A stretch of 64,000 nt of DNA, from positions 26,970,001 to 27,034,000 of the forward strand of contig OZ241833.1 of NCBI GenBank assembly GCA_965202585.1, written 5' to 3'. This stretch comes from Thalia democratica (taxonomy: Eukaryota). The notes beneath the pieces were generated by a model. It had not been told where the DNA came from, searched no databases, and saw only the letters and a list, made by a program, of their open reading frames with translations. Of the stretch, positions 1 through 23,522 are shown piece after piece (position 1 is the stretch's first letter; each line of letters starts with the position of its first letter). A program made the position numbers and the translations under genes.

Positions 1-75
1 GGAGCTATTAACTCTTTTATTTTTTATATCATTCCAATTTTCGAGCCACCTCTTGAGAAATTTGTTGGTGTAGAT

Positions 76-378: not shown

Positions 379-386
379 GTCTAGGT

Positions 387-1364: not shown

Positions 1365-4300
1365 GCGGGCGAGGAGGCTCTGATGGAGGCGCAGAAGTCG
1401 ATCAGGGAGCTGTTCGACAAGATCAGGTCCATCAAGGAGCGGGCGGAGCAGAGCGAGCAGATGGTGGAGGAGATCACCAGGGACATCAAGCAGCTGGACG
1501 TGGCGAAGCGGAACCTGACCACCGCCATCACCGCCCACAACCACCTGCACATGCTCATCAGCGGCACCGACACGCTGGAGACTCTGACCGCTAACAAGTT
1601 GGTTGCAGATTTTTGTACAAGTTGTTATAGAGCAGTGGTCGGCAAACTGCTGCCCGCGAGCTGATTAATTTTTTTTTAACTAGTTAGATATATTAACATT
1701 CTCAAAAAACAAAAATTAGGTTTTAGTACTATCTTTAAAGAATAATCTAACGCCTTTTTTTTGTTTAAAAAAGTATCTTTAAATTTGTTTTTTAAAGCAC
1801 ATAAAAAACGTTCCTCTTTTGACCTGCCGACCCCTGTTGTAGAGTGTTGAATAACTTTACGTTAAACCAAAACTGATCTTACCATGAAAATAACTTTTTA
1901 AAATGTCTATTATATCCTGTAAAACATTGTATGTTTATATCCCAATAAATTTCACCACTAACAGATTAGTTTGTTTACAAGTGTAGTAGGGACATCGGTA
2001 AGGTACGCTGCTTGAACCAAGGCAAAAGTGTGTACCTTGCGTAGAATGCGTATCTTTCAGTTATGAGAAAATTTTTACCCTGTTCGCACTGTTTAATAAC
2101 TAGTATCTTTAACTTTTAAAATAAAAATACGGACTATTGTAGTTTATCTTAAAGTTACAATATTTTTTCAAAAAAGTTGTTTTATTTTGAGTTAATTATA
2201 TTGTAACCATGTTTTCCTTCATTTAGTTTTATTTTTAATATAAAATATCTTAAATTTGTTTTTGTTTTTTTAGGACAGTGTGGAACTACTGAAGAATTTT
2301 TAAAAATCTAAAAGAAACAAAAAAAAGTTTTTTATAGTTTAGAGTAGGAAACAAAACTACTTTTATATTATTATTCTAATTTATTTTGCACATAAAAACA
2401 GCCTTAATACAAATAAGTAATAATACTAGACTGTTCTTGATTTAGTATGAGCAGCAAAAATTACTGGCAATCTTAATAGTAAAAAAAATATATCAATAGG
2501 TAAGATCATTAAAATAAAAATTCACAAGCTATTTTAGATTCCAATTAGTTGATATGTAATAGAAAACCTATCTTTAGTATTTAAATATTTAGTTTAGAAA
2601 TGTTATAAGAAAACTGTGCTTAGTTATTTAAGCCATCAATTAAAGCACAATAACGTTTAAGTATATATTTTCAACTTTACTAAAACATACTGCTTTATTT
2701 TTAGAATCTACCTGAAAAATAATAACTAAGTGTGAGCTTTTATTTCGATTATGTAACTAATTAAATAAATTTAAAAAAAAGTTAACCATTAACTGTTTAT
2801 TTCCACCAACCAGCTATAATGACTAATATTAAGAAATTCTTGTCTAAATATAGCGAATCTAAATTATTAACAGTATTTAATTACAACTTCGAACAATAGT
2901 TAATAAATAACTAAACGTATATAATTATATAATATAAATCTACCTTCAAAATCAAATGAGGGCATTTAAATTACTGACGTAAAATAAATCTAGCTACCAA
3001 TTAAAACAACCGACAATAGCTTAGATTTAATTTTTTTCAAATAAAAAAAAACTTTCTATTTAAAATAAGCTATAGGAATTTATTTTTTCGGAGAGCGTTT
3101 TCACCATACATGGGGCTACGTATAGAAACCTTTTAAAATAAAGTTACCTCAAAATGAAATTTATTGATATAGAACAAACCTTCAATAGATTTTTTTTAAA
3201 CCTACCTTGAACCAACATAAGTTAGACACCAAAAACGCAGGGTTAAAATATTTTTAAACAAACCTACCTTGAATTAATTTTATTATTTCACAAATTATAC
3301 ACAGAGAGTACGGCGAGGCGGCGGGATTGTTGCAGGGAGTTTTGAACGTGATGGAGCAGTTCGACTCGTACAAGCAGGTGGACACAGTCAGGTAAGAAAA
3401 AATTAAGTTGACATACAAGGTGTATATTAAGTCGTAGTACGTATGCATTTGAAAATACTCGTATTTAAACTTATCAGTTAAAATTGTTTTTACTGTTAAG
3501 ATTTTTTTTTTTTTCTTATCTTTTTATTTGTGGAACGAATGGTGTTTTAATTGTTACTACCTTTTAAAAAAGGGAGTTGTCAACCAAAGTGAAGAAAATC
3601 AAGGAAGACCTGACCAAGCTGGTCATAGGCGAGTTCGATCGCGCCTTCGGTGATTCCCCGCACCAGAAAGACTTGGGCGTGCTGAGGCAGTGTTGCGAGG
3701 TGGCGGACGTGTTGGAGGCGCGGGTGAGGCGGGTGATGCTGAAGCGGTTTCTGGGCAACCAGTTCAACGAGTACCTGGTTTTGTACGACAGCAGTCAGGA
3801 GGACGCGTGGCTCACCAACATCACCAAGCGGTACAGGTGGGTGGATTAATTGGCAAATAGTTTTAGTGTTTTAGAATAAATGAAGTCGAAGTGTTTTTAA
3901 ACTTAAAAAACGAGTTAATATAGTATCTCTTTCGAGTCTGCTTTTGGTGCTTTTTTTAAACAAAAAACCTTTTTATAATAAACTTTTTATTTTGTTTGTT
4001 CAATGAGTTTGTTGATATATTTCGTCTTTAAAGCAAGTAACCATTTAGCTTTTTTAGTTCAAACATAAACTTTTTTATCTTACAAGTATCAAAAATCATT
4101 TGAACGAAAAATTGTTATTCACACAACAAAACAACCACCATTAACCATTCAGATGGGTGAAGGAGCTGCTGGTGTCTTTCGAGGAGACCCTCTCACCCAT
4201 CTTCCCCAAACACTGGGAGGTTTCCGAGGAGATCGCGGTGGAGTTCTGCCGCATCACCAGGGAGGAGCTGGGCAAGGTGATGCGGCAGCGGCAGTCGGAA

Positions 4301-6813
4301 ATTGACGTCAATTTACTATTGTTCGCCATCCAGGTTCGTTATTTGTTGTGCAGACTTGAGAAGGTTTTTTTAAAGTTGCAAGATTGGCTGTGAACAAATT
4401 TTAAAAAGTACTCAAGCATGCCACATAAAATGAAATACAGTAACCTCTCGCTTATTTACGCACATTGCGTCCACAGAAAAAAATGCGTAAAGATACGAGA
4501 GATCGTAAAGATACGAGAGGTACCAAATATACTTACTATAATGGCTGTTTTTTGATAATGCTTCTAGTTAAAAGCAGACTGGGTACTTTCTTACTTTTAA
4601 CAAATTGTTTACTTTATTTATAAATCTGAAAACAAAAAATAAAACTATACATCCATTAAAAAAAAGGATTCAAATTTATATAAAATAATACTACTAGTAA
4701 AAAAAAATACTAATTCTAATAACAAGTAGATTTTGTCTTAATTTGTATGTGACTTTTTTGATACTTAACATTTATATTCTTATGTACTTGGCAAGTTCAA
4801 CTTATAAATAAGCATTAGTTTACAATAAAGAAATGGTGTGATGTCTATATTAAAATCTGTTTCTATAGTCTTCTACAAAAATATGCATTTGGTGCTGTAA
4901 TGGACTTCTTCTTTTGAAGAAAAATATATAAAATATAAGAAAAATGATTAATAAAAGTTGTTTATGTTACTACATTTATTTTTAGTTTGACCTCTACCCA
5001 TATAAGGATAAACTTAAATTTAATCTCTTATTGTTAACAAAATTTATGATATACTGAGGTATAACTAAATGTTCATCAATTAGTAGAGGAACATAAGTAT
5101 ACAAAGTCTAAAGATATAGAGAGGTGTATTAGCATTTAAAAAAATATTTTAAAATAAAAATAAACAGTAGACCTCATTTGTGCAGTTAAAAGAAAAATTA
5201 AAATTTTTATTTTTGAATTTTTTGGAACTTTAAAATGCGTAACTAAACGAGAGTGCGTAAAGATGCGAGAGGTTACTGTAAATAATTAAATATATAAGAA
5301 ACTTTACATCAAATTAATATTAAAAAATTTAGCGTTATTAAATGTTTTGTTTGTTTTAACTCAAAATATTGTTATCCAGCACACGAAAAAGTTTGAGAAA
5401 TTATTAGCCGACCGCCTGACTGGCGCCACCGTGCGGAGGGCCAAATCCGCCGAGGCCGCCACCAACCCATTCCTGCAGGGAGAAAAGAAAGAAGTTGAGG
5501 AGAAAGTCGATGAGGAAGGGGAAAGCCCGTTCGTGAGAATAATCTCCGTCTGCTTCGAGCCGCACCTGCACATCTACGTGCAGTCGCAGGACCACAGCTT
5601 CAGGGAGCTGATGGGCAAGTTCGAGCGGGACATCAGCGAGAAGGTGGAGGCCGTCAGGAGCGGCAAGTTGACGGAGAGCTTCGAGGGGGAGGAGCTGGCC
5701 AGCTGCGGCGTCCTCTTCACCTGCTACCGGAAGTGCCTGAAAAACTGCTTCGAGCTGTCCACCGGCAAGCCCCTGTGCGACTTGGCGTTGATATTTCAAA
5801 AGTACTTGAGGGAGTACGCGAGCAAGATCATGATGAAGAACCTGCCCAAGCTGTCCAACCAAGCCTCCAGCAGCTCGGCTTCGAGCGTCCCGGGTCCGCT
5901 GAGCCTGCAGGCGGTGACCAACCTGATCCTGAAGGACAACCAGGCCAACCAAAACTCCAGGCTGAGCGACGGGGAAGTGACGTTGACCTGCTCCATCCTG
6001 ACCACCGCCGACTACTGCCTGGACACGGTGGCGCAATTGGAGGAAAAGCTGAGGGAGAGGGTGGACGGCCACCTGAAGTCCAAGATCAACATGACGGAGG
6101 AAAGGGACATTTTCGGGTCCGTCATCTCGAACTGCATCTACTTGTTGGTGCAGGACCTGCAGCTGGCCTGCGAGCACCACTTGAGCGACATGTCCAAGAG
6201 GTCGTGGACTTCGTTGGACTCGGTGGGCGACCAGAGCTCGTACGTGACCCTGGTGGAGGCCTGCTTCAAGAAGACGATCCCGCTGGTCAGGGCCAACCTG
6301 TCGAAGGCCAGGAAGTACTTCACCCAGTTCTGCGTGAGGCTGGCCAACTCGTTCGTGGCCTCGTTCGTCTTCCACCTGTCCAAGTGCAAGCCGATTTCCA
6401 CGGTCAGCGCCGAGCAGCTCCTCCTGGACGCCCACTCCCTCAAAACCCTCCTCCTCGCCCTCCCCTCGATCGGCTCCAAGGCTCCCAGAAACGCCCCCAG
6501 CTCCTACACGCGCGTCGTGGTCAAGGGCATGACCCGCGCCGAGATGCTGCTGAAGGTCGTCATGACGCCGCACGAGCCCACCGCCCAGTTCGTGGCCTCG
6601 TGCATGCGGTTGCTGGTGGAGGCGGACCAGGACCAGGTGCAGAAGGTGGTGGACATGAAGGGGCTGAGGAAGGTGGAGCAGGCGCCCATACTGGAGGCGT
6701 TCCGGCGGGGGCTGAAGATTTCGGATAAGGGGAATTCCCTGAACAAGCAGGAAAGCGACGATTCGTCGTTCAGGATCAAGAAGCTGGAGAACTTGATCAA
6801 GAAACGCTTGTAA
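1365..6813 (+). CDS. VPS53: Vacuolar protein sorting 53 (GARP/EARP subunit), 5'-partial, 5 exons in window
   Basis: Exons 1365-1597, 3305-3391, 3573-3836, 4153-4333 and 5380-6813 join in frame through GT-AG junctions (2199 nt, 732 aa + stop). The translation matches VPS53 motifs I recognise: [98 protein letters not shown], and C-terminal [12 protein letters not shown]. The N-terminal ~80 aa lie upstream of the window. Confidence 0.96.
1633..1836. mobile_element. hAT-like MITE in VPS53 intron
   Basis: TIRs CAGTGGTCGGCA / TGCCGACCCCTG; TSD ttatagag / ttgtagag; subterminal GCCCGCG. Confidence 0.75.
4438..5278. mobile_element. pogo/Tigger-like non-autonomous element, TA TSD (VPS53 intron)
   Basis: TA|CAGTAACCTCTCGC ... 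GCGAGAGGTTACTG|TA, with repeated subterminal (G)CGTAAAGAT motifs; a second copy lies at 30476. Confidence 0.88.
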
Positions 6814-8099
6814 GCTTGTTTGCCCTCGTTTTTATCTATGCTTGACATTTTTGTTTAAAATTGCTGGCTGCGCAAAATACAATGTTTTTGTTAGATTGTT
6901 GTCCATTTGTATGTGTAGATATTTTTTGTGAAATAAGTATTTTTGTATCCACAGTACTTTCATTATATTATTATAATTTTACTCGTTACATTTAAAGATT
7001 TGTTCCTTTTATGTTAGTAAAATGTTTATTGATTTTTTTTTATAAATTTTTATTTATGTTGTGCTATGCTTCACATATTATTTGCTTTATATTTAATTAT
7101 TTATCAGATCTCTATAATAATTTTAAAATTCTTAATTAATTGTTATTTATTTTTGTAGTTTATAACTATACTCTAGTTTCTAAACTTAAAAATTTTAAAT
7201 TTCAACACTGACTTTTGCTTACAAATATAGTTGATTAAAAAAAAACTATTTCATAATTTACGTTTCTATGTTTTATTTGTTTTAGATCGAATAATTTTTT
7301 TTATCAATATAATTTACATTGACTGCTTCTATTTTCCTGAAAAAAAAAACTAATTAAAGCTTTTAACATTGTACATGTTCGTAGTTATTTATTCTAATCA
7401 ATGTTAAAAGCTTTCTAATTTTTACAATTTTATTTAGTTTTTAAGTAAGTTTTCAATTATTTTTAGCTTCTCTTTTTTCAATTCCATTGAAAAATTTTGA
7501 TTTAAGTTTGAAAAACTCTCTCTTAAACTAACATTTTACTAGTAGAAAATTGTTTTAGTTTATCTATATACTTTACTAGGTAAAATAAAACATTTATCAT
7601 ATCAAGCTCAAAACATGTTATAAAAAGAAGTTCTAAATCAAAAAAAATCTTTTATCTGATTTGTTATAACTAATTTTTTTAAATAATACTTTAACCACAA
7701 CTATTTATACATAATAGGGTTTTTTAAACAATACTTTTAATTAAAATATGTTTCAACCTTTATACTATGATAGTAATTGTTAATTACCCTAAACAATTTT
7801 TTTCAAATAAATCTTTGGTTTTGTTGGTATTTGCACTATTTGTAAGCATTTTAGGTTTTTTTTGAAATACAATTCTAAAACTATAGATTTTTGAGCTGTC
7901 TAAATAATTTAAGTTTTTAGAATTAGTACTTTCGCATAAATTGCTTTTCAATTAATTCCAGTTTTTATAGTTTCCTATTTAAAAAATCTTATTTCTTGAA
8001 ACATTTCTTTTTTAAACATATAAAAACAACATGCACACATTGTTCATATTCTATTTCTGTGTTTGCAATTTTTTCTAACTACTTGTTATATTCAGCAGA

Positions 8100-11000
8100 A
8101 TGGAAATAGATAATGTTTTAATTTGCTTTCTGGTTTTTCTGACGTCTAAATCCATTTCGAAAAAGCAGCAATTGTCATTGAAAGTAGATATTGGTAATGA
8201 TGAAAGTCACAGTTTTCCATTGGATGTAGTGTTTGGTGAAAAACATGCACAATATGGTAAAGAAGGCTCACTTGTAAGTTTTAATGCATTTTTCTTTTTA
8301 GTGGAAACAGTTCAAGCTTTTTTTGCACGCCGTGTTGATGTGCTAAAAACTAAGAAAGTACGTTTGTTAATTAAAAACTTTGAGATGAATGTATTTTATA
8401 CATAAAGAAACAATGTTTTTAGTATTATCGCAAAATGAATATTTTTAGCCTAATTTACTATAATCAGGACTAGACACAACAACAGTCATAAAAAAAGTTC
8501 TGTTGTATTAATGAAACAAGTTTTATTTTTAAGTTTTGTTCCAAAAAAAATATCTTTGTTAATAGCAATTAAATTATTATTAGCACAACGTTTTAATATT
8601 TGAACATATTTTTTGTGGCTATGTTAGTCCGGGTTCCCACTTACTGAGGCCACTCAGACTAGTTTGATGTTTTTTTCAGTCAACATGAAAAGTTCAGGCT
8701 TGTTTGAAGTGTTTTTTTTTAATTTTTAGTTTTTTTTTCTAGTTTTGAGTAACTATTTTATTTCATTTATTTGAAATCATGTTTTCTATAGATGTTAAGT
8801 TCTTTTGTTATTACCTGAATTTTGTAAGTGTTTCAGCTTGAGTAACATTTATTTAATTTTTAGCTCTTTTTTACTCATAAACTCAGGCTAGCTTTTGGTT
8901 ATTCAGACTTCCTTTTTACCTCAAAAAGTAGCAACCCTTGTATGTTCTCGAATGTCATTAAGACATTGACCTTACTAATATTTTCCTTAGTTAACTTGAC
9001 TTCTATAACCTTAAATTAGTTGTCATCATAATGTCTACAAACACGAAAATCTTTACACTAATTAGTCTTATAAAATTTAGTTAACTATATGAAAACAACA
9101 TATAAAATAAAAGTTTCAAGGATATATCACTTTAAACCAGGGTTTCCCAAACTCATTTTCATAATATTAAGTTGGCAGAAATTAAAAAGCTTCGCCCACT
9201 CCTTTTTAACATATCGCCCCTTAATTAATCATTTACCAATTTACTTTTTTGCCCTCTTATTGCTTGTTGCCCATGATAGCCAAAAATCACCTCAAAGGGA
9301 ACCCTGTTTCAAACTAGGTTGTACAAAATGTTTAACCAAAATACCTTATTTCAGCATTTCATTCAAATTTCATTCAAACTAGTAGTTACTGAAGCAAAAA
9401 GCTAACTTTTTTGGTATTTAATTCAAGTTTCACTTAAGTTGTGCTAAACTAATAATGTAAAGAAAAAGATAACTATCTTGATGTATTACAATCAAATTAT
9501 GTTGTGTTAATAAGCTTTTAAATTTTAATCTTTTTATTTAAGAGCAAAACTACTTACTAACTATCTAGGCAAATAAAAGTGCTTGTATTTGTAAACTTAA
9601 TGTCAAAAGAAAATACTTTTTTCAGTTCTAGTAGTTTAGTATTGAGTGCGCTTGAAAACTAAATTTTAATTCATTTTTTTACAGATGATGTTTGATGAAG
9701 TTGAAAACAAAATTTACATGTCTTCATCTAAATACTCACATGTGAAAATTGCTCTTGTTTTTGTCAAAGGTATTTTCGATTGTAAATCTATCAGTTGGTG
9801 ATACGCTTTTAGTAAATTACTTTGTTTTATAATCTCCGCATAAAAATGCTCATTTAATAATTCAACAATAAAAAATATGCTTTATAAATGTTTTGAAATT
9901 CTCAAACTGTTTCAACCTTAAGTAAAAACGAGTTATTAAAATTAAAACAGTTAATTCCTAAGCACTAACAAAATTTATCTGTGTATATTATACCTTGATA
10001 ATGCATCTATCTATACCAATGTTTCCTTTTTTTTTCAAATGTCCCCCTTCGAATAAATAAAAAAGGCTGTGGCCCCCTCCAACAAGACTACTCAAAAAAC
10101 TACCATTTAAAAACACCTAAGATCTTTTTTTGTTTTTTTTTTTGCTATTCATCTGCAACTCAAGAAATATCTAGTGTAAGTTTCAAAATTATTAATAAAA
10201 GCACCTAAGACCTTTTTTTGCTCTTCATCTGCATCTGAAGAATTTCTAGTGTAAGTTTCAAAACTTTATGACTGCCCAAAATTTTTAAAAATACTCTCCC
10301 TCCCTTTACTAGTTATTGCGCCCCGACTTACTAAAATTGTACCCAGGATGGCGGTACCACCCACTTTGGGAAACCCCTATTTGTACAATAATCTATATTT
10401 TTTGTAATATTCTGTTAAAATTAACTTGTACACAACTTATCTTATGCTTTTAAGGTCTGTTAAGGACTATAATGGGGGTCTCAAGCAACTTTGAAAAATT
10501 AAGAATGGCTTATGTATAAAAGAAGTTTGTTTGAGCTTCAACTTACTTATAATGTTTTTCATTTGATATATATTTAGTTTTGTAAAATGAGTTTTATAGG
10601 ATAAAGTTAATTCTTTTTTCGAGTTCAGTTTTCTTAAGAACTAAAAACATCACTAAAATTATTTCACTCCTAGGTTTTAAATATAGGTACCACAAATTTA
10701 AAATTATAATTCCTTAGTTTGATTTGAAAAGTGTAGCGTAGAATAAAAAAATATATATGGCTAAAACTAGTTACTAAAATAAAGTTTTTTTTATCGATTA
10801 GTGTTTTTGTTAAAAAATTAAAAATAATATCAAACAATTTTTTAATAAGGATCATAATTAAAGAAAACAATTTATTTAACTAGTTTTTGATTTGTTTTTT
10901 AAAAGGAATAATAATTAATTTTCATTTATTGTGCTACTTAATCATCTCTTTACAGCTAGTAAGTTGAAAAATACTTTTGTTTTTAAATAAAAATTGGTTT

Positions 11001-13679
11001 CTTAAAAATCGTTGGAATATATATTTTTTTATTGCATCGTATTTTTTCGCCTTTTTAGTAAGGACCTTTTTTACGAAACCAAATAAGCTGTTTAATTCTG
11101 ACCTGTTATCTCTCAAAAACTATATTGAACAAAATGTAGCGAGGAAAAGTAACTGGTAACTTAGTTTATTATCTTCAAAATAAAACCAAGATAAAAAATA
11201 GTTTAGCATACTCATTATGGTCTACTAATCAGTATTTTTGTACAATTGAAACATTTTTATTTAGTTCATAAGTATAACTTTTGTAGTAAAACTACTACAT
11301 TGTATGTATTGATTATGAAATTGATAACAAATGTTCAAAAGATGCCGAAAGTAACAGAGGATCGCCAAGAAACGTTTTAAATGATAAAGTTTTGTACACC
11401 GTGAAAAAGTTTAAAGAAATTGGCATCGATACTTTTGCAACAGTGGTGATTTCAGATATGAATTTGGATAAAAAGGTTATTTGTGTTTTGTTTTTATAGT
11501 AATAATTGATAGTTTTGAGGATTTTTATAAGTTTAGGCTGTTTGAAGCAAATAACATTTACTTTAATAACTAGTGTTTTTGTTTAATAACTAAAATTATT
11601 TTGGTTTATTTAAAGCATATAAGTACTCTTTTCTTTAAAGAATAGAAATATTTTGATCCTCTGAAGTTAATTAATTTTTAGTATTTTTTAGTTATTTTTA
11701 TTTTAAGCAAACACTATCATTTATCTTGTACCTTTAATATAAAAAAAAACTTATGTAAATTAAGTGCAACAGCTATCACTTTAAAACAAGTAGTTTTTTT
11801 TTTGTAATTATTTAAATAGCTAACTTTTTATTTTTTATTTCAGAAACTGTTTTATTCTCATGTTGGTCAAGTTTATTCGTTAAAAAGTAGCAAAAGTTTC
11901 AAATGGTGGAAAAATTTCCTTATATCATCTAAAAACTGTTATATTGAAGATAAGTTAACAGAAAATTCGGTATATATTCATGTTATTTTAATTAATATAA
12001 AAATATAAGTTCTTTTGCCTTTTTTCTTTTAAGTCTGATGTAAAAGTAAAAAGAAAGCAGTAAAACTTTACAAAAGCTTCATAAATAAAAGACTTTGAAA
12101 ATGAGTGGTAATTTACGTATTGACCCTTTTAAATATACTTAGGAGGCAATATGAAACTTGTATATATACAACAATCCTAGAAATGATAATTATAAGAAAA
12201 AAATTTGCAGTAAAAAAGTTTATAGTCTATGCAGTGTTTAAAAAAAGTCATCTTATTTATTTAAAGTTTTTGAGTCTATAAGAATTATACATACAATACA
12301 ACGACTAAAGCTTAAAACTAACCTATTCAGTATGTTGAAAAAAATAAAGTAAACAGTTTCAGGTGTTAAAGTTACTATAATTTTAGCTAAGTAACAGGTT
12401 TATGCAATTTTTACTCAAGTTCTATAGTTTTTGTGGTTAGAGTACATTAAAATGTTGCCTTGTATCCTTGATTTTAATTTTTCTTAGAAAATAATATCTG
12501 AATTTTACAAGTAACGCTGTATTTTAATTTAAAAAAAAACTTCTGTTCAGCTTATTTGTTGTTATCATACAGCTTCACACATTTTAGTTATGTTTTGTCG
12601 CAACATTTAACCTAGCATATCTCTTTTGACCACACACCGCATGATTTTTTAACCAATTCAAACCCAACAGGAAAACTCAATGTCCAAATACGTTGATAAA
12701 TTTGTGCTGACGTCAGCATTGATGCTGGTCTTGTTCATAGTGTTGGGATGGAAAACATTGCACCAGGGACTGCCAAGCCACGTGACTTCAGTGCATGTTA
12801 GTGGCTGCCACTGTTTGTGTACAAATACGTTGTTTGAAACTGGTTGTGATTTGTTTGAAATTTTGTATAAATTTGCAAACAGGTTAACTTTACAGTGCAA
12901 CTTGTTGTGATTAAAATATTTTACGTTAAAGTTCATTTTTCCAATGTATTAAAATTTGTTGATGCCTTCTTGATTTTAACTTCAGGTTTTAGTAAATGAA
13001 GTTATACAAACAAAAAGCTTTTTTTTTTGCTTATGATTAGAAATATAAACTTTTAAGTATGTTTAAAGTTATTTAGCGTATATAAATTTGTTATCAAAGA
13101 AATCTTTTTATACTTAAGGAGCTGTTTCCAACAAAATCTGAAATAGCCAGTTATTGATTAAAAAAGTTAGTATTGCTTTATAAATCAACACAGCTAATAG
13201 TTGTTCAAAAATTTTTAGAGAATTTTAAAGTCTTCCATACATACTTAAAATATCTAATATTAATTGCAAAATTTGTGAACATAAGCTTTTTTTTGTAAAG
13301 TTTAAAATACTGTATATTATTTACATTTAATTTTTCTATAAATCCCTTAGTTTATCTTGTACACTAACTAAGCTCTGAAGTAGATTTATTATAATTTTTT
13401 TCAACATTTGAATCCAAAAAACACTGGCAGGTTTTCCGGGCAGCTAAAAAGATTGTCAACGAAATGGAAGAAACGACCTGCAACGTTGAGCGAACTGACC
13501 AATTCGAAACCGAAAACGGCTGCCCAATCTGCCTCGAAAAGTTCGTTGGCAACCGACCCATACGCGTGTTGCCATGCAGACACCGTTACCATAGCGACTG
13601 CGTCGATGATTGGCTGGTGAAGAGGCGGAGTTGCCCGTTATGCGGTTACGATATTTTGCGAAATTACAAAAATGCGTGA
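8100..13679 (+). CDS. PA-TM-RING-H2 E3 ubiquitin ligase (Goliath/GRAIL/RNF13-like), divergent; exon 3 start uncertain
   Basis: Proposed exons 8100-8273, 9685-9769, 11342-11475 (5' boundary doubtful), 11844-11969, 12671-12796 and 13431-13679 give about 297 aa. Features: N-terminal signal-like MEIDNVLICFLVFLTS; degenerate PA-like segment (KIALVFVK..RG..KVL..VVISD); TM segment FVLTSALMLVLFIVLGW; AKKIV (Goliath-like AKKAI); RING-H2 CPIC-x14-CRHRYHSDC-x10-CPLC in the last exon. Confidence 0.75.
9139..9306. mobile_element. Short hAT-like MITE
   Basis: CAGGGTTTCCC ... GGGAACCCTG termini; the TSD is only approximate. Confidence 0.5.
10017..10378 (-). mobile_element. CAGGGTTTCCCAAA-family hAT MITE, reverse orientation, with internal duplication
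   Basis: Reverse complement of 26845-27126. The ctagtgtaagtttcaaaa block appears twice. Flanks atctatac / atttgtac. Confidence 0.7.
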
Positions 13680-13968
13680 TCTTTTTAAAGTGTGTCTTGC
13701 TAAATTGCACTGCCCGGAGTTTTATAATTTACTTTTCACTTTAAATTTTTTACTTTGATTTTTGATAACTGTTTTTGAAATGTGCAATTTCGAGTTTGTT
13801 TATTCATACCTGTATGTTTTTATCTTTTTAATGTATTTTTTGGTACCTTAACATGAAAATAGTTTGCTGTTGTTTACTAGAAAACAAAACCTGATTATTT
13901 TGTGAAATATTTAGAAAGTACGTTTGAATAGTTTAGATTGGCCTTAAAACAAGTTTTGAGCGGATGTT

Positions 13969-14608
13969 ATAGGCATTTGGGAGGTAAATCACTTTTATCA
14001 TAATTTGATCTAATTTTCTTTAATTTTAACTAAGCTAAAAGTTGCTTTTTACAATTTGAAAAAATTCAAATTAATTTTAGAAAAAAGATATAGCCGGTCA
14101 AAATCGGAGACTACGAATATTCCTTGTGGGAGGCGCAAACTAAAAAGGAGAAAAAAGACAATTTCACTAAAAATCTATCTACTCCTAAGTTTTTTGAGAT
14201 AATCACCTCAAACTTTCAGGAAGTTTTTTTTGCAATATTTAGAATATTCTGTCTGAAAAAAATCTAAAAAAAAAAATATATATATATAATAAATTAAACA
14301 AAAAAAATTTTTTTTTTTTTATTAAATTTTATTTGCTCATAATTTTGTTCCGGCAGAATTTTCTAAATATTGTAAGTAACGAGTCTGAGGTGATTATCTT
14401 CAAAACGTAGAAGATATATTTTCAGTTATTCGCCGTTTTAGTTTGCGCCTTCCATAAGAAACCTATAGTAGTATCCGACTTCGACCGGCTATATCTCAAA
14501 AAGTATTATTAGTTTTAAAAATCTGTTAAAAGCAACTTGTAGCTAAGTTAAAACTCAATAAAATAAAGCTAAATTGTGAAAAAGGTGATTTACCCCTCCC
14601 TTATGCCC
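13969..14608. mobile_element. Fold-back MITE, same family as 35283-35962 (Kolobok-like), decayed
   Basis: Arms share gatatagccggtc and gggaggcgcaaactaaaa with their reverse complements; the centre is poly-A/poly-T. Confidence 0.8.
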
Positions 14609-15276
14609 TCATACAGTTTATTTTCCAGTTGTGAAAAAGTAACAAAAAAAACTAAGACTTCAAATAAAAAAAACTATCTTCAGTTTTTACTATGTTACAT
14701 TTGGTGCACTTTATGATCAAAATCAAAAGAGGCCAGTAGCAACATACAAATTATTTTGAAACAACCATTAATGAAAATATTTTGTTAAAAGTCTAAACTT
14801 GCTCGCAAGTACTTTTATAAAAATTTATTAAAAAAATATTAAGTAGTATTTCAACTTACAATATTCAGTTATCATGATTTCTATTACTGAGTTTGTAGTT
14901 TCTGTATTTACAAACTAAATTTTTATTTCATGGGATAAGTTTTTTTTCAAAGTGTACTTAATTTTATTTTTGTTTTCAATGCTGATCCGTTATGGACATT
15001 CTTTTAAGATTAGCTGTTTTAGATTTTTTTTTGTCAAATTTGTTAAGATTAGACGCTATACGATCCAAGTGTAAAAAATAACTATATTATCTATAGCAAC
15101 CAGACTCAGAAAAAAAAATTATACGCAGTAATTTTCATGTATTTTATTTTTAACTTGAAATTTAGTTTCCACAAATAACAATTTTCAAATAAGTTGTATA
15201 CATTTTATGAACATAAATAAATGTCATATGTTGTTTTAAAGTAAAAAATAGTGATATGAACAAAATTTCACTTCAG

Positions 15277-15510
15277 GAATCAATTGCGTACAGAGCCACT
15301 TTGAGACTTTAGATATATTTTTGAGTAAATTGAGTGCAAAACATCAACTAAGTTTCTCAAAACTACAACAATCGTGTTAAAACAATTTGTACACTAATTA
15401 AGTTTTTGGAAAATAACTTCGGTTTATATGAGCAAGAAAACTTTGAATATTTGTATAAATACATGGATGATGAACTTTTAGCTGTTCAAAAAAGTATTCT
15501 CTGTTTATAA
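15277..15510 (+). pseudogene. Possible frameshifted coding relic or terminal exon
   Basis: After the ttcag acceptor at 15272-15276, two adjacent frames read INCVQSHFETLDIFLSKLSAKHQL and VSQNYNNRVKTICTLIKFLENNFGLYEQENFEYLYKYMDDELLAVQKSILCL*. They are joined by removing one base near 15351. No family recognised. Confidence 0.2.
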
Positions 15511-17610
15511 AAGAGTTTTATAGCCTTTTAATAGTTTTTTAATTTATCTATATTTAGTTATTTTAAGTTTGGTATTGATTTACTTCAATGTAGGGGCGTG
15601 TTTTGACTGATTTCCCGTGCGACCCCAAAAAAAATGTAATAAAAAAAATTGAAGTGTTTCTTTTTTAGTTAGTTTACTATAGATATATATATCTACATGT
15701 TAACTTTTTGATATCAGGCAAAGTATATTTTCTATTTAGTGTCAAAAGCCACTAAAATTAACAAATAAAAGCAAAATTTTCATCATAAAAATAAATTATA
15801 TTTATTAAAAGGTTATCAGAAGGCTTAAGTATTTATTTAATTACATATAAGTAAGTATTTATGTTCAACCCAAAATTTTTTGAATCTACCTTGCACCTTT
15901 AAAATTTATATAACTATGTAATTACAAACTTCAAATGAATAGAAATTTATGAAAAGATTGAGTATGTTTTTATTTAATTGTGCTTATTGTAAAACGATAT
16001 TTTAGGGTTCTAAAACAAGCAACATAAAAAAAAACGACAATCTACAATAACAAACATGTTTTCAAAAGTATCTAGTTCTAAATAAATCTCAATTGCAATG
16101 TTTTTTATTAATATCACGTTTTACTTTTATATCTTAATCATTGCTTATATAAGTGTCAATTGAAATGTTCGTTAACATCGCTTTTTTATACGTATTTTAT
16201 ATTTATGATACAATCATTGGGTATGTACGCGTTAATTTCACTATTAAATATTTACTGTAAATAAATAAACTTTAACATGTTTATTTCAAATATTGAGTTT
16301 GATATACAGTTCGTAAGTTCATTACTTATTTTCTGGTTTCTTTGGTTTTAAATTATTTAAATTAAATATAGTACAACTTATTTAAAATATAATGCTTTTG
16401 TATTACTAGTTTAAGATTTAAAAAAATTACATTTTGAACTCAGCGTTTTGAAAAATTGCGTACTAACCCGGCAGTTCTTACCTAGCAAGTGCGTATCTAG
16501 TTGGCAGGTAACTGTACTTTGAAAAAGTTGTAAATTACGTACCGAGCACATTTAAAAAGGAAATTTTAATTCAAATTAGCCAAGCAAAAGTGTTTTAAAC
16601 AAACTATTTTGAATGATTTTACAGCTCCCAGGGTTATATTTTTTAATAGGAAGCGTTTCACAAAACACGTATTGTTTTGATTTATACAACACTAAACACT
16701 TTACATTTTTTGATAAAGTTTTATAATAGTTGTTAACGTCTGCTATTAATTTGTTTTCAAACATTTTGTTTGTTTTTAGCTTGATATTTTGCTTTTCTAT
16801 TTCAAGTAGAGCTTTTTGATTGGGTAATTTATTTAAATATCAATGAACATGTTTTTCTATCATTAATACAAGTTAATTACAAAATTTTATTAGCACTTTG
16901 TATTTAGTCTCTTACAAATAGACCACTTTGTTATACATTTTAGCTTCAAAAAGTAAAGCATAATTTACATATGGTCAACAATTACAGGGTCTGGATATTT
17001 TTACTGAAATTTAAAGAACTCGATTTTTATTGGGATTTGCATGTTTTTTACTAGTTTTTTATAATCGTTTAAAATTTAAATACTTTTATGCACCTGAGAA
17101 ACTTCCGAAGTTAGTGTAGTGCTCAATTAAGGAATGTTTTAAAGTATATTATTTAACAAAAAAAAAAGTGCAACCCCACTAAAAATTAGTCTAGGCATGC
17201 CCCTGCAGCATAGATAGTATGAATAATTAACACTCAAGTATCGTATTTTTTTACAATATTTGTATTAATTACCATTATTTAAGTTAAACTTCCGAGGTAT
17301 TGAGTTTTCAAACATAAGTAAAGCTAAAGATTTTCATGTAACTAATTAAGATGACTTTATTCTGTTTTTAAAAAGTATATTATTATTAGTAATAAACATA
17401 ATTTCCTTATTTAGAGATATTTAAATGCATAATCAAAATAAAAATCATACAAATGAAGTTTAAAAAGTTTTTGTTGTTGTCTTTAATATGCAACTAAATT
17501 TACAACTATTATTTTACATAATTTAGTATTTTTAATATTAAGAATTCTCTAGATACAATAACGCCTTCAGTAAACATTTCAGAATTTTTGTGTATTTTCA
17601 TCTGAGAAAA

Positions 17611-18108
17611 ATGTCTGAGAAGTACAATACTGGTGATGGAAGTAACGGAGCAGGGTCTAATGGAGAACTCAGACGCAGTGCTAGAATTCTGAAAAGAAGT
17701 AATGAAAAGGCTAAATCTGATACTAACCCAACTTCCAGTACCAATAATGAACCAATGATACAAAATATTAATGAGCCAAATATGCCTAGAAATCCACAAG
17801 CTCCTGAAATTCCACAAGCTCCTGAATATCAACCAGCTCCTGAAAATCAACCAGCTCCTGTTAATCAACCAGCCCAAGCACCGCTCGATGGACCAGCTCG
17901 CCGACGAAGAGCAGAACCAAGGAGAAGGATTCGTTGCCGTCGGTGTGTAGGGTGCTTGCGGCAGAATTGCAGAGCATGCATATATTGCAACGATATGATA
18001 AAGTACGGTGGCCCCGGTATCATGAATCAAAGTTGCATGATGAGAAGATGTTTGAATCCTGTTGACCCGGATGTCGGACCTCGTATCCTCCGCCCAGTGA
18101 ACAAATGA
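17611..18108 (+). CDS. Small single-exon CXXC zinc-finger protein (KDM2/FBXL19-type ZF-CxxC only), 165 aa
   Basis: ORF from ATG 17611. The C-terminal [47 protein letters not shown] carries all 8 Cys and the K(F/Y)GG motif of ZF-CxxC. AATAAA occurs at 18349 and 18443. The frame stays open upstream to 17542, so extra upstream exons cannot be excluded. Confidence 0.85.
17791..17880 (+). repeat. Coding 18-bp tandem repeat x5 ([30 protein letters not shown] linker)
   Basis: Units read directly at 17791, 17809, 17827, 17845 and 17863. Confidence 0.9.
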
Positions 18109-19565
18109 ATCGACAGTCTCCCGTTGCGTGTGGAATTTGTTCTTGGAATGAGCAACTCAAATTTGTTGGTGCATATCAGCATTGATGTTGTTCATAGAGT
18201 TTATTAAACTATTTTACCACAACAAGTTGTGATCACTTTTGCTTAAAAGTTGTTATACGTATTACTATAGGACAATTTTTGAAAAGTAGCTGTTTACGTT
18301 TCTGTATTTATAATGTTTTGTGTTTGGAAAGTAATGTTTTATACGCTGAAATAAATAGTTGTTATTAGTTTTATTTTAGATTTAGGTTTCAAAATATGCC
18401 TTGTCAAGCACTGTGAATAGTTTTTGACTCTATCATTTGATGAATAAACTTTGAACTTTAATTGCTTTGACTTTGTAATTTTTAATAAGTATATAAACGC
18501 TATACAGGTTATACAGCATTTTACTTTAAAACAGTATTATTTTTAAAACTATCATACTTAATAAATTTATAGTTCATTACTAACTCTAATTTCAATTTAT
18601 TGTTTTCATAGTGGAACAAGCCATTTAGCTGTAAGTTTATAGTTGTCCACTTTCAAATAAAACTTTGCATGTCACTTATGGACAATAAATTATACTTCAT
18701 TTCCTAAGATCTCTATTCTCTTCATTTAAATCTTAATTCTCCAGTTTTATAAACCCCAGACCCCGAATAACTAAAGTTTCAAACCTCTTATGAATTTTAA
18801 TTATTTTCTTGTTCTAGAAATCCTAGATTATCTAATACAACTTTCAAAACTTAAAAGATCGTATTTTTACCCTTCGCTGGCCGCATTGACCTACATTTGG
18901 CATGGCTAGTAATTCCCCAACTTATATAAAACTTATTTTGATTATATATATGTATAACTAACAATGTTTAACAAAGTATACACATACTTATGCAGTTCAA
19001 TGCAATTACATACATGCAATTTTTTACATTTATTTAAGCTTTTATATATCAATTCTGATTAAGTCGATGAGGCAAACTGTTAAAAGAAAACCTTTAATAT
19101 TAAAAATTCCTTCCTGATATAAATCAGTTTTAGTCTAATCATTGTTGCACAGTAAATTTTTACTTAGTTCAGAATTTAAAAACAGGTTTTGATAACTTTG
19201 ACATAATGCCTAACGAGGTGCTTATAAGTTATATCATTAATTTTAACATTAGGCTTAAAAAGCAAAAGTTTTATCTTATAATCTTTTAAACTTTGGATCT
19301 TGGTGACCGGAAAAAAGTCGTCGTACACCACAATTAAATTAAAACCATAAAGAGCTAAAATTAATGTCAAAATTTAAACCTAAAAAAAAATCAAATAGAG
19401 AATATATAAAAACTTTTCCAAAAAACATGCATTTCAAACATTTTAAATCTTAAATATGTTAAATTTAAAAACTTCAAAGTGTTGATTATTAAAAAAACTT
19501 ATAAAAATTGTTCGAAGAAGAGAAAAAAAAGAAATATGTGTTTTATGGGCCGTAGTACTTTGTAG

Positions 19566-21339: not shown

Positions 21340-23522
21340 ATGAGCAGCCAATCGAGGACCAACGTGCGTCCCAACTGCCAGCCGAGGAGGAACGGCCACG
21401 CCCAGACCGACGGGCGTTACGAGGACGAGGAGCTGGAATGGAGCCCGGTGAGGGTCGGGTCCGCGCTCGCGGTGGTCTTGCTGCTCGCCTACGGATCTTA
21501 CAGCATGTACTCGCTCACCGAAAGTGACGTCAGCAGTGCCTACGTCAGGCCGTGAGTTGAATGTTCTTTTGTAAAATACACCTTTTATATTGTTATATAG
21601 AATATACTTTTTATCGTTATCAAAAAAAATTGTTTTGACCGGAAATTTCTGTATCTTTCAAAGTTTGAAATGTTAGTTTCTGTGTGAAGATTATAATTAA
21701 CCAAATAAAATTACGTTGAAATTAGTTTTTTAAAATAATTTTAAAATTTTCTTTTTTCCTGAAACACTTTAGGACTTAAGATATTAAATTTATAAGCCTA
21801 GACTTGAATAATTGTATAGTTCTAGTATGAAATAGTTCTTAACTTTTTCACAAGCTTATGAGGTTTATTAATACTTGATTTAAATTTTTTTTAGATGATT
21901 TTTGTTTTATTTTTATTGAAATTTTAATTTATGAGTTTTTGCATAAATTTATTTTGATACGCTTAAAAACAATTACTTTTTTTCTAACTATCAATTTTTA
22001 ACTTAAAAGTTTTGATTACCATACAAACAACATTGTTATAGTGCAATTAACCATTTTGTTGATTGTTTGACACAATTAATTTTTTTCTCACTGAAAATAA
22101 AGTAGTCAATTATTACTTTAGTTAATATTTCAAAGCCTAGCAAAGAAATAAGCCTAATGTTTCTACAGGGAACTGAAGCCCGGGATCGCCCCAGGTTGGA
22201 ACCCTCCTAAATTTAATGACCCCGAACCTCGACCTATCAATAACTTCCCTCAATTCGAGCCTGACCCTGTACGCCCTGACCACTGGTCTAAATTGACCCC
22301 ACTCCACCCAGACCCATCAAGAAATCCCAAGTTCCTCAATGGCGATCCCAGATTGCGCCCGACCGTCAAGCAGCCAAGAGGAGAGACCATGTCAGCTCAT
22401 AGTTTCGAGAAACCTCAGTTTCTTTCCGACAGACCTGCTGCTCTTAAAAAGAAACGGTGGGATGATGAGGACTTGGAGGACGTGAACCCTGTTGACAATC
22501 CTGCGAACTGGGAAAAAGTAAAGTATGATCAGAATCCGAGATCAGCGCGCGAAAAAAGTAAATACAGATATGACGGCGGTAACGATTTGAACAATGTTGA
22601 TGACCACTTTGAGCTGTCGAAGTGGGACGATCTTAAAAAGAAAAACGAAAAAAAGCACGCCCAAAGCTCGTATCTTGCACGTGAGAAAACAGAAGGCAGA
22701 TCTCAGCTTCCTCTTAATTCTCCCGCTGATCCCACCGGTAAACCTGCTGCTTCCAATAAAAAATGGTGGGAGGAGGAATTCGAGGAGCCTGATCTTGATG
22801 ATGAACCTATTGCTGCCAAGAAAAAATGGGGAAATGAAAATTTCGACGAAGATGATTTTTTAATGACTGACGAAGATGATTTCTTTTCCGACGAAGATGA
22901 TTACTTGTTGCCCGACGAAGATGACTATTTGATGACTGACGAAGATGATTTCTTGTTGCCCGACGAAGATGATTACTTGATGTCCGACGAAGATGATTAC
23001 TTGATGTCCGACGAAGATGATTTCTTGTATCCCGACGAAGATGATTTCTTTTTCGACGAAGATGACTACTTGATGTCCGACGAAGATGATTTCTCGTTTG
23101 ACGAAGATGACTACTTGTACCCCGACGAAGATGATTTCTTGTTGCCCGACGAAGATGATGACGAAGGCTATATTTTTGATCTCACCGATAAACCTGCTGC
23201 TCGCAACGAAGTATGGACGGGTGAAGGTCTCGAGGAAAGTTCTTTCTACCGTGAGTTGATCGCGTCGGACAAATCCCGATTTCCGACCAAGGAAAACCGT
23301 AAAAATGTCGACGGCAGAAATCCCAGCCGGGACTGGCCAGGATTCACGGCTGAAAAAAGTCGAAACGGGTATGCTGACGAGATTAAGTGGACGGATTTCG
23401 GTGCTGACCATGGAAAGTGGAACAAGGATCGGGATGAGGAGCGTTTCAACGGTAGAAACAACCAACGTGAGAAGAGGAGGTCTAATGGATTTGGAAGAAG
23501 GCCAGCAAACGTCCAGTGGTAA
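21340..23522 (+). CDS. Orphan type II single-pass membrane protein with acidic DEDD repeats, 521 aa
   Basis: Exon 21340-21551 (GTGAGT donor, phase 2) joins 22169-23522 (ttctacAG acceptor) in frame. A hydrophobic anchor VGSALAVVLLLAYGSYSMYSL sits at about aa 40-60. AATAAA is at 23574. Confidence 0.82.
22845..23163 (+). repeat. Coding 24/21-bp tandem repeat, 13 full units + partial, encoding DEDD(F/Y)(L/F/S)x(x)
   Basis: The GACGAAGATGA(T/C) core recurs every 21 or 24 nt from 22845. Confidence 0.95.

What the first reader, a model, noticed from the sequence alone, without database searches (positions are those of the whole stretch)
17611..18108. Minimal chromatin adaptor: HMGN-like RRSARI anchor + flexible linker + lone KDM2-type CXXC finger
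Seen: the 165-aa ORF contains only LRRSARIL (17668-17691), a Q/P/A/E-rich repeat linker and a complete 8-Cys ZF-CxxC. There is no JmjC, PHD, F-box, SET or MBD domain. Known: this finger closely follows the KDM2/FBXL19 type (from memory RRRTRCRKCEAC...DMKKFGGPGRMKQSC), which reads unmethylated CpG. RRSARLSA is the HMGN nucleosome acidic-patch-binding core. Inference: a two-point nucleosome + CpG binder without catalytic activity could act as a dominant-negative competitor or shield of unmethylated CpG. In this genome CpG is concentrated in exon islands, so it might mark or protect exons. Its AT-rich, intronless 5' half suggests a young, possibly germline-restricted retro- or fragment-derived gene.
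Basis: partly seen in the sequence, partly recalled or inferred. Interest (0 to 1): 0.75.

Follow-up and report, generated by a model that had tools for sequence, protein, structure and literature searches.

The report
Small stand-alone CXXC chromatin protein gene
A 165-codon gene in a very AT-rich marine animal genome encodes only a floppy front part with a short arginine motif of the kind that docks on nucleosomes, plus one KDM2-type DNA-reading zinc finger. It is a real, old, lineage-restricted gene of a small family, but its expression and both binding activities are untested.

Summary
It has LRRSARIL at 17668-17691, a P/Q/A/E repeat linker and a complete 8-Cys zf-CXXC (Pfam 1.8e-12). The finger is closest to KDM2A/KDM2B/FBXL19. 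No JmjC, PHD, F-box or LRR lies in the ORF, and no JmjC or LRR exon in the window.

- For: RRSARI is identical to the tested nucleosome-binding motif of yeast Dot5. A complex model with this genome's own H2A-H2B puts residues 20-29 into the acidic patch (ipSAE 0.86, best control 0.00).
- Against: the anchor arginine is missing in every homologue.
- Against: the finger's CpG-reading dipeptide is NQ, not KQ/RQ. That is 0 of 208 related fingers, and K-to-A at this Lys abolishes DNA binding in KDM2A/B.
- Against "young retrogene": synonymous sites against the genome's KDM2-like genes are saturated. The gene belongs to a family with three more loci here and relatives in Tara Oceans metagenomes. A short 5'-UTR intron seems conserved.

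No RNA data were found, so expression is untested.

Verdict: a new variant of known kinds (lone-CXXC proteins; HMGN-like motif proteins), of moderate interest.

The parts
17526..17582 (+). Inferred short (about 57-nt) intron in the 5' UTR: GT donor at 17526-17527 and AG acceptor at 17581-17582, with a second AG at 17569-17570.
   Evidence: A GT donor 55-60 nt upstream of an AG acceptor that lies 18-29 nt before the ATG recurs in all seven family loci (window, L016, L009, L010, L011, L028, L029). This is inferred only. DNA contigs of another individual or haplotype read T at 17580 and C at 17582, which removes this AG.
17583..17610 (+). Conserved 5' leader (TTTTGTGTATTTT...AAAA) directly before the start codon.
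   Evidence: About 80% identical to the Tara contig L016 over 48 nt. A T-rich GTGT core is shared with the paralogues.
17611..18108 (+). Complete coding sequence: 165 codons plus a TGA stop.
   Evidence: Single copy in the genome.
17671..17688 (+). RRSARI (R21 R22 S23 A24 R25 I26), an HMGN/Dsup/Dot5-like arginine motif.
   Evidence: Identical hexapeptide to the Dot5 motif RRSARIAT, where R6, R7 and R10 are needed for nucleosome binding (PMC13347269). Residues 20-26 and 28-29 contact H2A 60, 61, 64, 65, 90 and H2B 38, 41-44, 99, 100, 103 in the complex model.
17635..17787 (+). Family-specific N-terminal unit (DG-NG-G...RRS..I...S...A.SD...TS.T..E...QN.N..P), predicted disordered.
   Evidence: Invariant columns D9 G10 N12 G15 R21 R22 S23 I26 S30 A34 S36 D37 T41 S42 T44 E47 Q51 N52 N54 P59 in alignment A1. 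pLDDT is 44-57.
17794..17898 (+). P/Q/A/E repeat linker (QAPE / QPAPEN units) up to the basic run.
   Evidence: GC3 is 0.03-0.17. DNA homology to L016 ends near 17870-17892.
17917..18051 (+). zf-CXXC domain, type-1 and KDM2-like (residues 103-147), with KYGG at 131-134.
   Evidence: Pfam, PDB, AF2 pLDDT 83-94 over residues 101-130 and 91 over 141-150, Foldseek.
18025..18030 (+). N139-Q140, at the place of the CpG-reading KQ/RQ dipeptide.
   Evidence: 0 of 208 CXXC domains in the best library hits have NQ; 165 have KQ or RQ. All six canonical fingers of this genome have KQ.
18203..18448 (+). Candidate polyadenylation signals: ATTAAA at 18203-18208, AATAAA at 18350-18355 and at 18443-18448.
   Evidence: Sequence only. 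Weak evidence in AT-rich DNA.

Best explanation
This is a self-contained, single-coding-exon gene for a small non-catalytic chromatin protein. It is restricted to a lineage of marine planktonic animals; other notes of this scan call it a pelagic tunicate, which I did not check. It belongs to a small family built as N-terminal disordered unit(s) + P/Q-rich linker + C-terminal CXXC finger. In this member the finger is a well-kept type-1, KDM2-like CXXC. In the paralogues the finger loop has degenerated and the N-terminal units carry SUMO-interaction-like IIDLTSSTDDE motifs instead. The likely mechanism has three steps. First, the RRSARI motif (R21, R22, R25) docks in the H2A-H2B acidic patch as in HMGN2, Dsup and Dot5. 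Second, the roughly 75-residue flexible linker lets the finger, with its flanking basic runs, reach nearby DNA. Third, the protein thereby occupies nucleosomes without modifying them. Shown: the ORF, the domain, the fold, the family, its age and the absence of other domains. Inferred: nuclear or chromatin location, acidic-patch docking (model only) and DNA binding. CpG and methylation selectivity is doubtful, because the reading dipeptide is NQ rather than KQ/RQ.
For: The ORF is intact, with a 188-codon open frame in 25%-GC DNA. The CXXC scores 47.5 bits and is nearest to KDM2A/B and FBXL19. The finger's dN against the two KDM2-like genes tested (0.24-0.29) is like the dN between those genes (0.23), while dS is saturated, so the finger has been under long purifying selection. 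The family is collinear: C7:42434313-42435113, C7:42580017-42580580 and C1078, plus Tara proteins P0148, P0152, P0153 and P0154. The start codon, leader and splice signals recur across members. The locus is single copy and no KDM2 exon lies nearby. RRSARI equals the Dot5 motif, and the three Arg match those required in HMGN2, Dsup and Dot5 (PMC13347269, PMC12487698). The complex model with own H2A and H2B scores ipSAE 0.86 in the median of three runs, against 0.00 for the best of three controls. That mark was reached by 51 of 78 solved complexes and 2 of 108 mismatched pairs. The runs share at least 52% of contacts and the partner's pLDDT is at least 54. The contacts are H2A E61, E64, D90 and the H2B Q47-elbow and E105/H109 equivalents. 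The other DNA-contact residues of the KDM2B finger (R610, D632, K635, R649 equivalents) are kept (PMC12361114). DNMT1-like genes (BAH + C5 methylase) exist in the genome, so unmethylated versus methylated CpG is a meaningful signal here.
Against: No RNA evidence: only two DNA runs hold the stretch, and the exact protein is in no collection. The N-terminal half evolves fast (dN/dS 0.57 against L016, with equal identity at all three codon positions). The anchor Arg (R25) is absent from every homologue (RRSDTIL, RRSNII, GRSNIN, RHINVI, RRSFIV, RQSILV). Given the family's RRSxxI core, the full motif could therefore be a chance gain. NQ replaces KQ/RQ (0 of 208), and K-to-A at this Lys kills DNA binding in KDM2A and KDM2B (PMC3098377, PMC3524939). 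The complex test is not calibrated for disordered peptides and may score from memory of solved HMGN or Dsup complexes. The nearest relative, P0148, shares only the N-terminal half and has no finger on its 1.1-kb contig. The inferred acceptor AG is altered in another haplotype.
Confidence: 0.55

Rival explanations
1. The gene is real, but the two proposed contacts are wrong. The RRS-containing basic stretch is a nuclear localisation signal, a kinase site or a family-specific protein-binding motif. The NQ finger no longer reads unmethylated CpG: it has altered or no DNA specificity, or works as a protein-binding zinc module like type-2 CXXC.
For: The family-wide conserved core is (K/E)P-RRS-xx-I-x-(K/N)K-S, without the fifth-position Arg. 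The paralogues pair this core with SIM-like IIDLTSSTDDE motifs, which suggests protein-protein functions. NQ is found in 0 of 208 fingers. The paralogue fingers have lost KFGG and KQ entirely, like the type-2 fingers that have lost the KQ DNA-binding motif and all loop similarity to type-1 (PMC3685328).
Against: All three functionally required Arg are present and the model docks them as in Dsup and HMGN2. Apart from K-to-N and K-to-I, the finger keeps the rigid KYGG loop, the Gln and the flanking Arg that contact DNA.
Confidence: 0.25
2. The ORF is the last coding exon of a longer gene whose upstream coding exons were not recognised.
For: The frame is open from 17542 through the inferred acceptor at 17582 to the ATG. 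A conserved acceptor shows that an upstream exon exists.
Against: The Met and the MSEK/MSKRK start are conserved in all family members, and the leader shows no codon-position pattern. No KDM2-like or other coding exon lies between VPS53 (ending at 6813) and 17611; GC is at most 0.31 throughout. Metagenome gene calls for relatives start at or near the same Met.
Confidence: 0.1
3. The ORF is an unexpressed or functionless relic that merely remains open.
For: No RNA holder was found. N-terminal dN/dS is 0.57. A key DNA-reading Lys is lost. The nearest relative lacks the finger.
Against: A 188-codon open frame is very unlikely to persist by chance in DNA this AT-rich. All 8 Cys, the GG, D128 and the flanking Arg are kept although synonymous sites are saturated. 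The whole family keeps open frames across species at omega 0.5-0.7.
Confidence: 0.1

Closest known systems
KDM2A / KDM2B / FBXL19 ZF-CxxC (type-1)
   Same: It has the best sequence and fold matches. It shares the 8-Cys scaffold, the K(F/Y)GG loop, the Gln of the reading tripeptide, the CLxP tail and the basic run before the first Cys. This genome holds at least four JmjC+CXXC (KDM2-like) genes from which the finger plausibly derives.
   Different: It has no JmjC, PHD, F-box or LRR. The ORF stops 18 residues after the last Cys. It has NQ instead of KQ, and I instead of the first K of MKKFGG.
CXXC4 (IDAX) and CXXC5
   Same: These are small proteins whose only folded domain is a C-terminal CXXC finger. 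IDAX is thought to have arisen by splitting off from a catalytic parent gene, TET (PMC3685328). This is the same evolutionary logic.
   Different: They carry type-3 fingers (short linker, HQ, TET-derived). This one is type-1 and KDM2-derived. Foldseek ranks CXXC4/5 last. There is no homology outside the finger.
HMGN-like motif proteins: vertebrate HMGN1-5, tardigrade Dsup, yeast Dot5
   Same: It has the R-R-S-(A/S)-R-(L/I) core with all three arginines. Its hexapeptide is identical to Dot5 RRSARI. Dot5 likewise pairs the motif with a separate DNA-binding part for two-point nucleosome binding (PMC13347269, PMC12487698). The model contacts match the acidic patch.
   Different: There is no Pfam HMG14_17 match. 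The motif is not conserved in homologues, and the rest of the protein is unrelated. Binding is untested.
KDM2A-SF / KDM2B-SF short isoforms
   Same: They are non-demethylase products that keep the CXXC finger and can act apart from the full enzyme (PMC7588095).
   Different: They are isoforms of the parent gene that keep PHD, F-box and LRR. Here a separate locus encodes the finger alone.

Membership tests
ZF-CxxC (PF02008), type-1 | Eight Cys in CxxCxxCx4-5CxxCxxC ... CxxxxC spacing, with a Pfam score above the gathering cut-off. | tested here: met
   C109/112/115/120/123/126/142/147; 47.5 bits against 26.5.
ZF-CxxC (PF02008), type-1 | KFGG rigid-loop motif. | tested here: met
   KYGG. All canonical fingers of this genome, and 72 of 208 library fingers, also have KYGG.
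ZF-CxxC (PF02008), type-1 | KQ or RQ CpG-reading dipeptide (PMC3685328). | tested here: not met
   NQ at residues 139-140; 0 of 208 related fingers have it.
ZF-CxxC (PF02008), type-1 | Crescent CXXC fold. | tested here: met
   AF2 block pLDDT is 88, 94, 83 over residues 101-130 and 91 over 141-150, dipping to 60 over 131-140. The top Foldseek hits are 6ASB, 4O64 and 4BBQ.
ZF-CxxC (PF02008), type-1 | Binds unmethylated CpG DNA. | not testable with these tools
   Needs EMSA or SPR.
KDM2/FBXL19 protein family | PHD finger directly after the CXXC, then F-box and LRR (JmjC in KDM2). | tested here: not met
   No such Pfam hit in the ORF. tblastn with the JmjC, CXXC and LRR parts of this genome's KDM2-like genes finds no further match in the window. 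The stop lies 18 residues after C147.
HMGN (PF01101) / HMGN-like motif | HMG14_17 domain match. | tested here: not met
   No hit up to E = 1.
HMGN (PF01101) / HMGN-like motif | R-R-S-x-R-(L/I) core with three arginines. | tested here: met
   R21 R22 S23 A24 R25 I26. Identical to Dot5 residues 6-11 (PMC13347269).
HMGN (PF01101) / HMGN-like motif | Motif conserved among orthologues. | tested here: not met
   P0148 has RRSDTIL. The paralogues and Tara relatives lack the fifth-position Arg.
HMGN (PF01101) / HMGN-like motif | Docks on the H2A-H2B acidic patch. | tested here: inconclusive
   The model supports it (0.86 against a best control of 0.00; 51 of 78 solved and 2 of 108 mismatched pairs reach the mark). 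Peptides are outside the calibration and memory of solved complexes is possible.
CXXC4/CXXC5 (type-3 lone CXXC) | Short linker without KFGG; HQ dipeptide. | tested here: not met
   The linker is full length with KYGG and NQ.

The most novel reading that the evidence does not exclude
This is a natural, non-catalytic two-point nucleosome binder that combines an acidic-patch arginine anchor with a KDM2-derived finger. Its changed reading dipeptide (NQ) would give it a DNA specificity different from all known type-1 CXXC fingers. It would act as a competitor or shield against this genome's expanded KDM2-like demethylase family at CpG-dense exons. Together with its SIM-bearing paralogues, it would form a new lineage-specific class of chromatin adaptors.
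Probability: 0.15. Interest if true: 0.7.

Novelty: new variant of a known kind. Interest (0 to 1): 0.45.

Why it matters
If expressed and active, this would be a compact natural example of multivalent nucleosome reading: an acidic-patch anchor plus a DNA finger on a flexible tether, with no enzyme attached. It would be a second, independent case, after TET and IDAX/CXXC4, of a CXXC finger escaping from its catalytic parent gene. The NQ substitution offers a natural test of how far the KQ/RQ reading tripeptide can change. The recent Dsup, HMGN2 and Dot5 work predicts "an untapped realm" of HMGN-like motif proteins, and this is a candidate in a chordate relative. If it is silent or inert, it is just one more fast-evolving lineage-specific small gene.

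Tried and rejected
- The search for homologous proteins with the ORF alone found nothing at E <= 0.001. A family profile then found three C7-type relatives.
- The look-up of encoding contigs and the listing of cluster members: the exact protein is not on record.
- The look-up of sequencing runs (kind rna) listed only two holders, neither on record as RNA, from one study. When laid, they behave as DNA contigs of another individual or haplotype. They gave no expression, strand or splice information.
- Atlas look-alikes gave only generic CXXC clusters below 0.9. Taxon identification through the VPS53 exon failed.
- Last exon of a KDM2 gene: rejected, because the window holds no JmjC or LRR exon.
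- Part of a transposon: rejected, because 17207-19000 is unique in the genome. Only 16900-17206 belongs to a dispersed repeat.
- Recent retrocopy: rejected, because of saturated synonymous sites and the conserved intron signals.
- Synteny with the Tara contig L016: DNA homology is limited to window 17570-17870. The cyclin-like peptide downstream on L016 has no counterpart in the window. Whether P0148 is an orthologue that lost the finger or a paralogue stays open.
- A D-box reading of the RRS region did not fit RxxL spacing (inspection only).
- The paper on the KDM2A-nucleosome structure (7UV9) is not in the searchable library.

Full report
**1. What is there**

window:17611-18108(+) is an intact 165-codon ORF in DNA of about 25% GC. 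The frame is open for 188 codons.
- Residues about 48-96 are a P/Q/A/E linker with QAPE/QPAPEN repeats.
- Residues 97-108 are a basic run.
- Residues 103-147 match Pfam zf-CXXC at 47.5 bits (cut-off 26.5), E 1.8e-12. No other family appears up to E = 1.
- All eight Cys are in place.

Solved relatives rank KDM2A 7.9e-17, KDM2B 6.5e-14 and FBXL19 9.4e-13, ahead of MLL2, DNMT1, CFP1 and MBD1.

An AlphaFold2 model built on a 34-row alignment has confident structure only in the finger. Block pLDDT is 88, 94 and 83 over residues 101-130 and 91 over 141-150. The N-terminal 100 residues look disordered, with pLDDT 44-69. Foldseek returns FBXL19, KDM2B and KDM2A first, and the TET, CXXC4 and CXXC5 fingers last.

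**2. Surroundings**

The window is C9:26970001-27034000 of an 802-Mb eukaryotic assembly.
- Upstream on the same strand lies VPS53, with GC-rich exons, ending at 6813.
- From 7001 to 17000, GC never exceeds 0.31 per kb and there is no convincing exon.
- tblastn with this genome's KDM2-like proteins finds only the finger in the whole window.
- The stretch 17207-19000 is single copy. Only 16900-17206 is a dispersed repeat.

The ORF is therefore neither an exon of a nearby KDM2 gene nor part of a repeat element.

**3. A gene family, not an orphan**

The genome holds at least four JmjC+CXXC (KDM2-like) genes:
- L002, multi-exon, GC3 0.74.
- L003, an intronless 901-aa ORF, GC3 0.25.
- L006 and L007.

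It also holds two tandem CXXC exons on C4.

More telling, three further loci encode small single-exon proteins that are collinear with this ORF. They are C7:42434313-42435113 (267 aa), C7:42580017-42580580 (206 aa from the ATG) and a broken copy on C1078. Each has one to three copies of the same N-terminal unit, a P/N/Q linker and a C-terminal 8-Cys finger. Alignment A1 has 23 invariant columns across the family. They include D9, G10, N12, G15, R21, R22, S23, I26, S30, A34, S36, D37, T41, S42, T44 and E47.

In these paralogues the unit ends in IIDLTSSTDDE. From general knowledge this is a textbook SUMO-interaction motif with an acidic tail. Their finger loop has lost KFGG and KQ, and Pfam scores are 25.0 and 23.8 bits, below the cut-off.

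A profile search found three C7-type relatives (P0152, P0153, P0154). The single-sequence representative search found P0148, which matches the N-terminal half of this ORF at 44-46% identity. The contigs looked up (P0148, P0152, P0153) come from Tara Oceans marine metagenomes; P0154 is listed only as an ENA sequence. In this genome the best match to P0148 is this ORF. Other notes of this scan call the organism a pelagic tunicate; I did not verify that.

**4. Age and selection**

Measurements on the finger, against the KDM2-like genes L002 and L003:
- 52% and 45% amino-acid identity.
- Third-position identity only 0.34-0.39, and NG86 dS not computable because of saturation.
- dN is 0.24-0.29, the same as between the two KDM2-like genes themselves (0.23).

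The finger is therefore old and has been kept by selection. "Young" is not supported.

The N-terminal half evolves fast:
- Against L016, dN is 0.37, dS is 0.655 and omega is 0.57, with equal identity at the three codon positions.
- The C7-type genes show omega 0.5-0.7 between species.

GC3 jumps from 0.20 in the N part to 0.49 in the finger part. The jump lies close to where homology to L016 ends. P0148 has no finger on its 1.1-kb contig. Its ORF may run into a GT donor and is followed by a cyclin-like peptide that is absent from the window. Whether the finger was lost there or the two are paralogues stays open.

**5. Gene model**

In all seven family loci an AG acceptor lies 18-29 nt before the ATG, and a GT donor lies 55-60 nt further upstream. 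In the C7 type the donor reads AG|GTTTGTGC. A T-rich GTGT leader and the Met are also shared.

I infer a short 5'-UTR intron at window 17526-17582, with the whole CDS in the next exon. That argues against a retrocopy and against a coding upstream exon.

One caveat: DNA contigs of another individual read T at 17580 and C at 17582. That removes this AG, although another AG sits at 17569-17570.

No RNA run holds the stretch, so none of this is confirmed and expression is untested.

**6. The finger's DNA-reading loop**

Type-1 CXXC fingers read CpG with a rigid tripeptide ending in KQ, or RQ in CFP1. Type-2 fingers have lost it, and the review treats their capacity to recognise CpG islands as unclear. 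Type-3 fingers have HQ (PMC3685328).

The Lys of KQ is K643 in KDM2B, by the residue numbers in PMC12361114. By my count on the 7UV9 chain it is also K601 in KDM2A. K643A and K601A abolish DNA binding (PMC3524939, PMC3098377).

Here the dipeptide is N139-Q140.
- Of 208 CXXC domains in the fetched library proteins, 151 have KQ, 14 have RQ and none has NQ.
- All six canonical fingers of this genome have KQ.
- The other contact residues are kept: the Arg before the first Cys, D128, K131 and R145, equivalent to KDM2B R610, D632, K635 and R649. The first K of MKKFGG is Ile.

DNA binding as such remains likely, because the finger is very basic. CpG and methylation selectivity is an open question.

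DNMT1-like genes (BAH + C5 methylase, three tandem copies) exist in the genome. CpG o/e is 0.57-0.78 in non-coding DNA against 0.8-1.2 in exons.

**7. The RRSARI motif**

There is no HMG14_17 Pfam match. However, the motif class is now known beyond vertebrates.
- Cryo-EM shows HMGN2 (RRSAR) and Dsup (RRSSR) docking in the acidic patch. The fifth-position Arg acts as the anchor, on H2A E61/D90/E92 (PMC12487698).
- Yeast Dot5 uses RRSARIAT, where R6, R7 and R10 are needed. Dot5 adds a DNA-binding part for two-point binding (PMC13347269).

This ORF has the identical hexapeptide.

I took H2A and H2B from a histone repeat of this genome and ran the complex test with ORF residues 1-60:
- ipSAE was 0.86, 0.86 and 0.85 in three runs, against 0.00 for the best of three controls.
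- That mark was reached by 51 of 78 solved complexes and 2 of 108 mismatched pairs.
- The runs share at least 52% of contacts, and the partner's pLDDT is at least 54.
- ORF residues 20-26 and 28-29 touch H2A 60, 61, 64, 65, 90 and H2B 38, 41-44, 99, 100, 103. These are the acidic patch and the H2B elbow.

The tool warns that peptides are outside its calibration and that solved look-alikes can be remembered. It shows likeness, not binding.

Two points count against selection for this function. No homologue keeps the anchor Arg (RRSDTIL, RRSNII, GRSNIN, RHINVI, RRSFIV, RQSILV). Only RRS..I is family-wide. Given that core, gaining one Arg by chance in one of about ten units is not unlikely, although the full motif is rare in shuffles (2.4e-4).

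**8. Verdict**

The best reading (confidence 0.55) is a real, lineage-restricted, non-catalytic chromatin protein whose KDM2-derived finger has been kept for a long time. Two-point binding, with the acidic patch and DNA, is plausible but unproven.

The rivals are:
- The same gene with other roles for the motif and the finger (0.25).
- The last exon of a longer gene (0.1).
- A silent relic (0.1).

It is a new variant of known kinds: lone CXXC proteins such as IDAX and CXXC5, and HMGN-like motif proteins such as Dsup and Dot5. No paper in the searchable library combines "HMGN-like" with CXXC. Interest is moderate: the combination is neat and testable, but expression and both activities are untested, and two key details (NQ, the unconserved anchor) cut against the simple story.

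Noticed in passing
G000 C7:42434313-42435113(-) (L010/L012), C7:42580017-42580580(+) (L009/L014), C1078:18470-19445 (L011); Tara relatives L028, L029: Paralogous small single-exon genes carry two or three N-terminal units, each ending in IIDLTSSTDDE (SUMO-interaction-like), plus an 8-Cys finger whose loop has lost KFGG and KQ. The frames stay open across species (omega 0.5-0.7). The C1078 copy has stop codons.
   Followed up: partly
L002 (C8:57.16 Mb), L003 (C8:41.62 Mb), L006 (C5:31.22 Mb), L007 (C5:61.42 Mb): There are at least four JmjC+CXXC (KDM2-like) genes. One is an intronless AT-rich 901-aa ORF (GC3 0.25), beside a multi-exon GC-rich one (GC3 0.74). None gave a PHD or F-box Pfam hit. 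The open frame of L006 stops right after its finger.
   Followed up: partly
L016 (Tara contig, 1079 nt) 158-556 and about 890-1050: The nearest relative of the N-terminal half (P0148) has no finger. Its ORF ends at a possible GT donor and is followed, in the same frame, by a peptide that looks like the start of a cyclin box (EPEYADDIF..). It may be a different fusion of the same N-terminal module.
   Followed up: partly
window 1-6813 (+): VPS53 gene with exons of 56-59% GC set in introns of about 20-30% GC. The last exon is 488 codons.
   Followed up: partly
window 22293-23522 (+): 409-aa ORF with an array of DEDD-aromatic repeats and no Pfam match. Another first-reader note (s1-313748) covers it.
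   Followed up: no
window 53565-53915 (-) and 57943-58293 (+): Two similar 116-aa ORFs in inverted orientation about 4 kb apart, in GC-richer patches. There is no Pfam match. They are probably arms of a repeat or mobile element.
   Followed up: no
window 16001-16500 and 16900-17206: Dispersed repeats. Summed contig depth is 10-20 times that of the flanks at 16001-16500. The search's 40 listed other matches (its list limit) for the window:16900-19000 query all fall within 16900-17206.
   Followed up: partly
G000 C10:25.64-25.96 Mb, C7:14.67-14.91 Mb, C8:46.19-46.31 and 54.37-54.45 Mb (L036 = one unit): Long tandem arrays of histone repeat units (about 7-10 kb) carrying H3, H1-like, H2B, H2A and H4. 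150 H3-type matches were scored, the scoring limit, out of 959 first-look candidates.
   Followed up: partly
G000 C1:49968705-49997951 (L037-L039): Three tandem copies of a DNMT1-like gene part (BAH + C5 DNA methylase in one open frame of about 840-880 codons).
   Followed up: partly
window 17838-18004: The DNA contigs of both runs have no depth over the finger-coding stretch although both flanks are covered.
   Followed up: no
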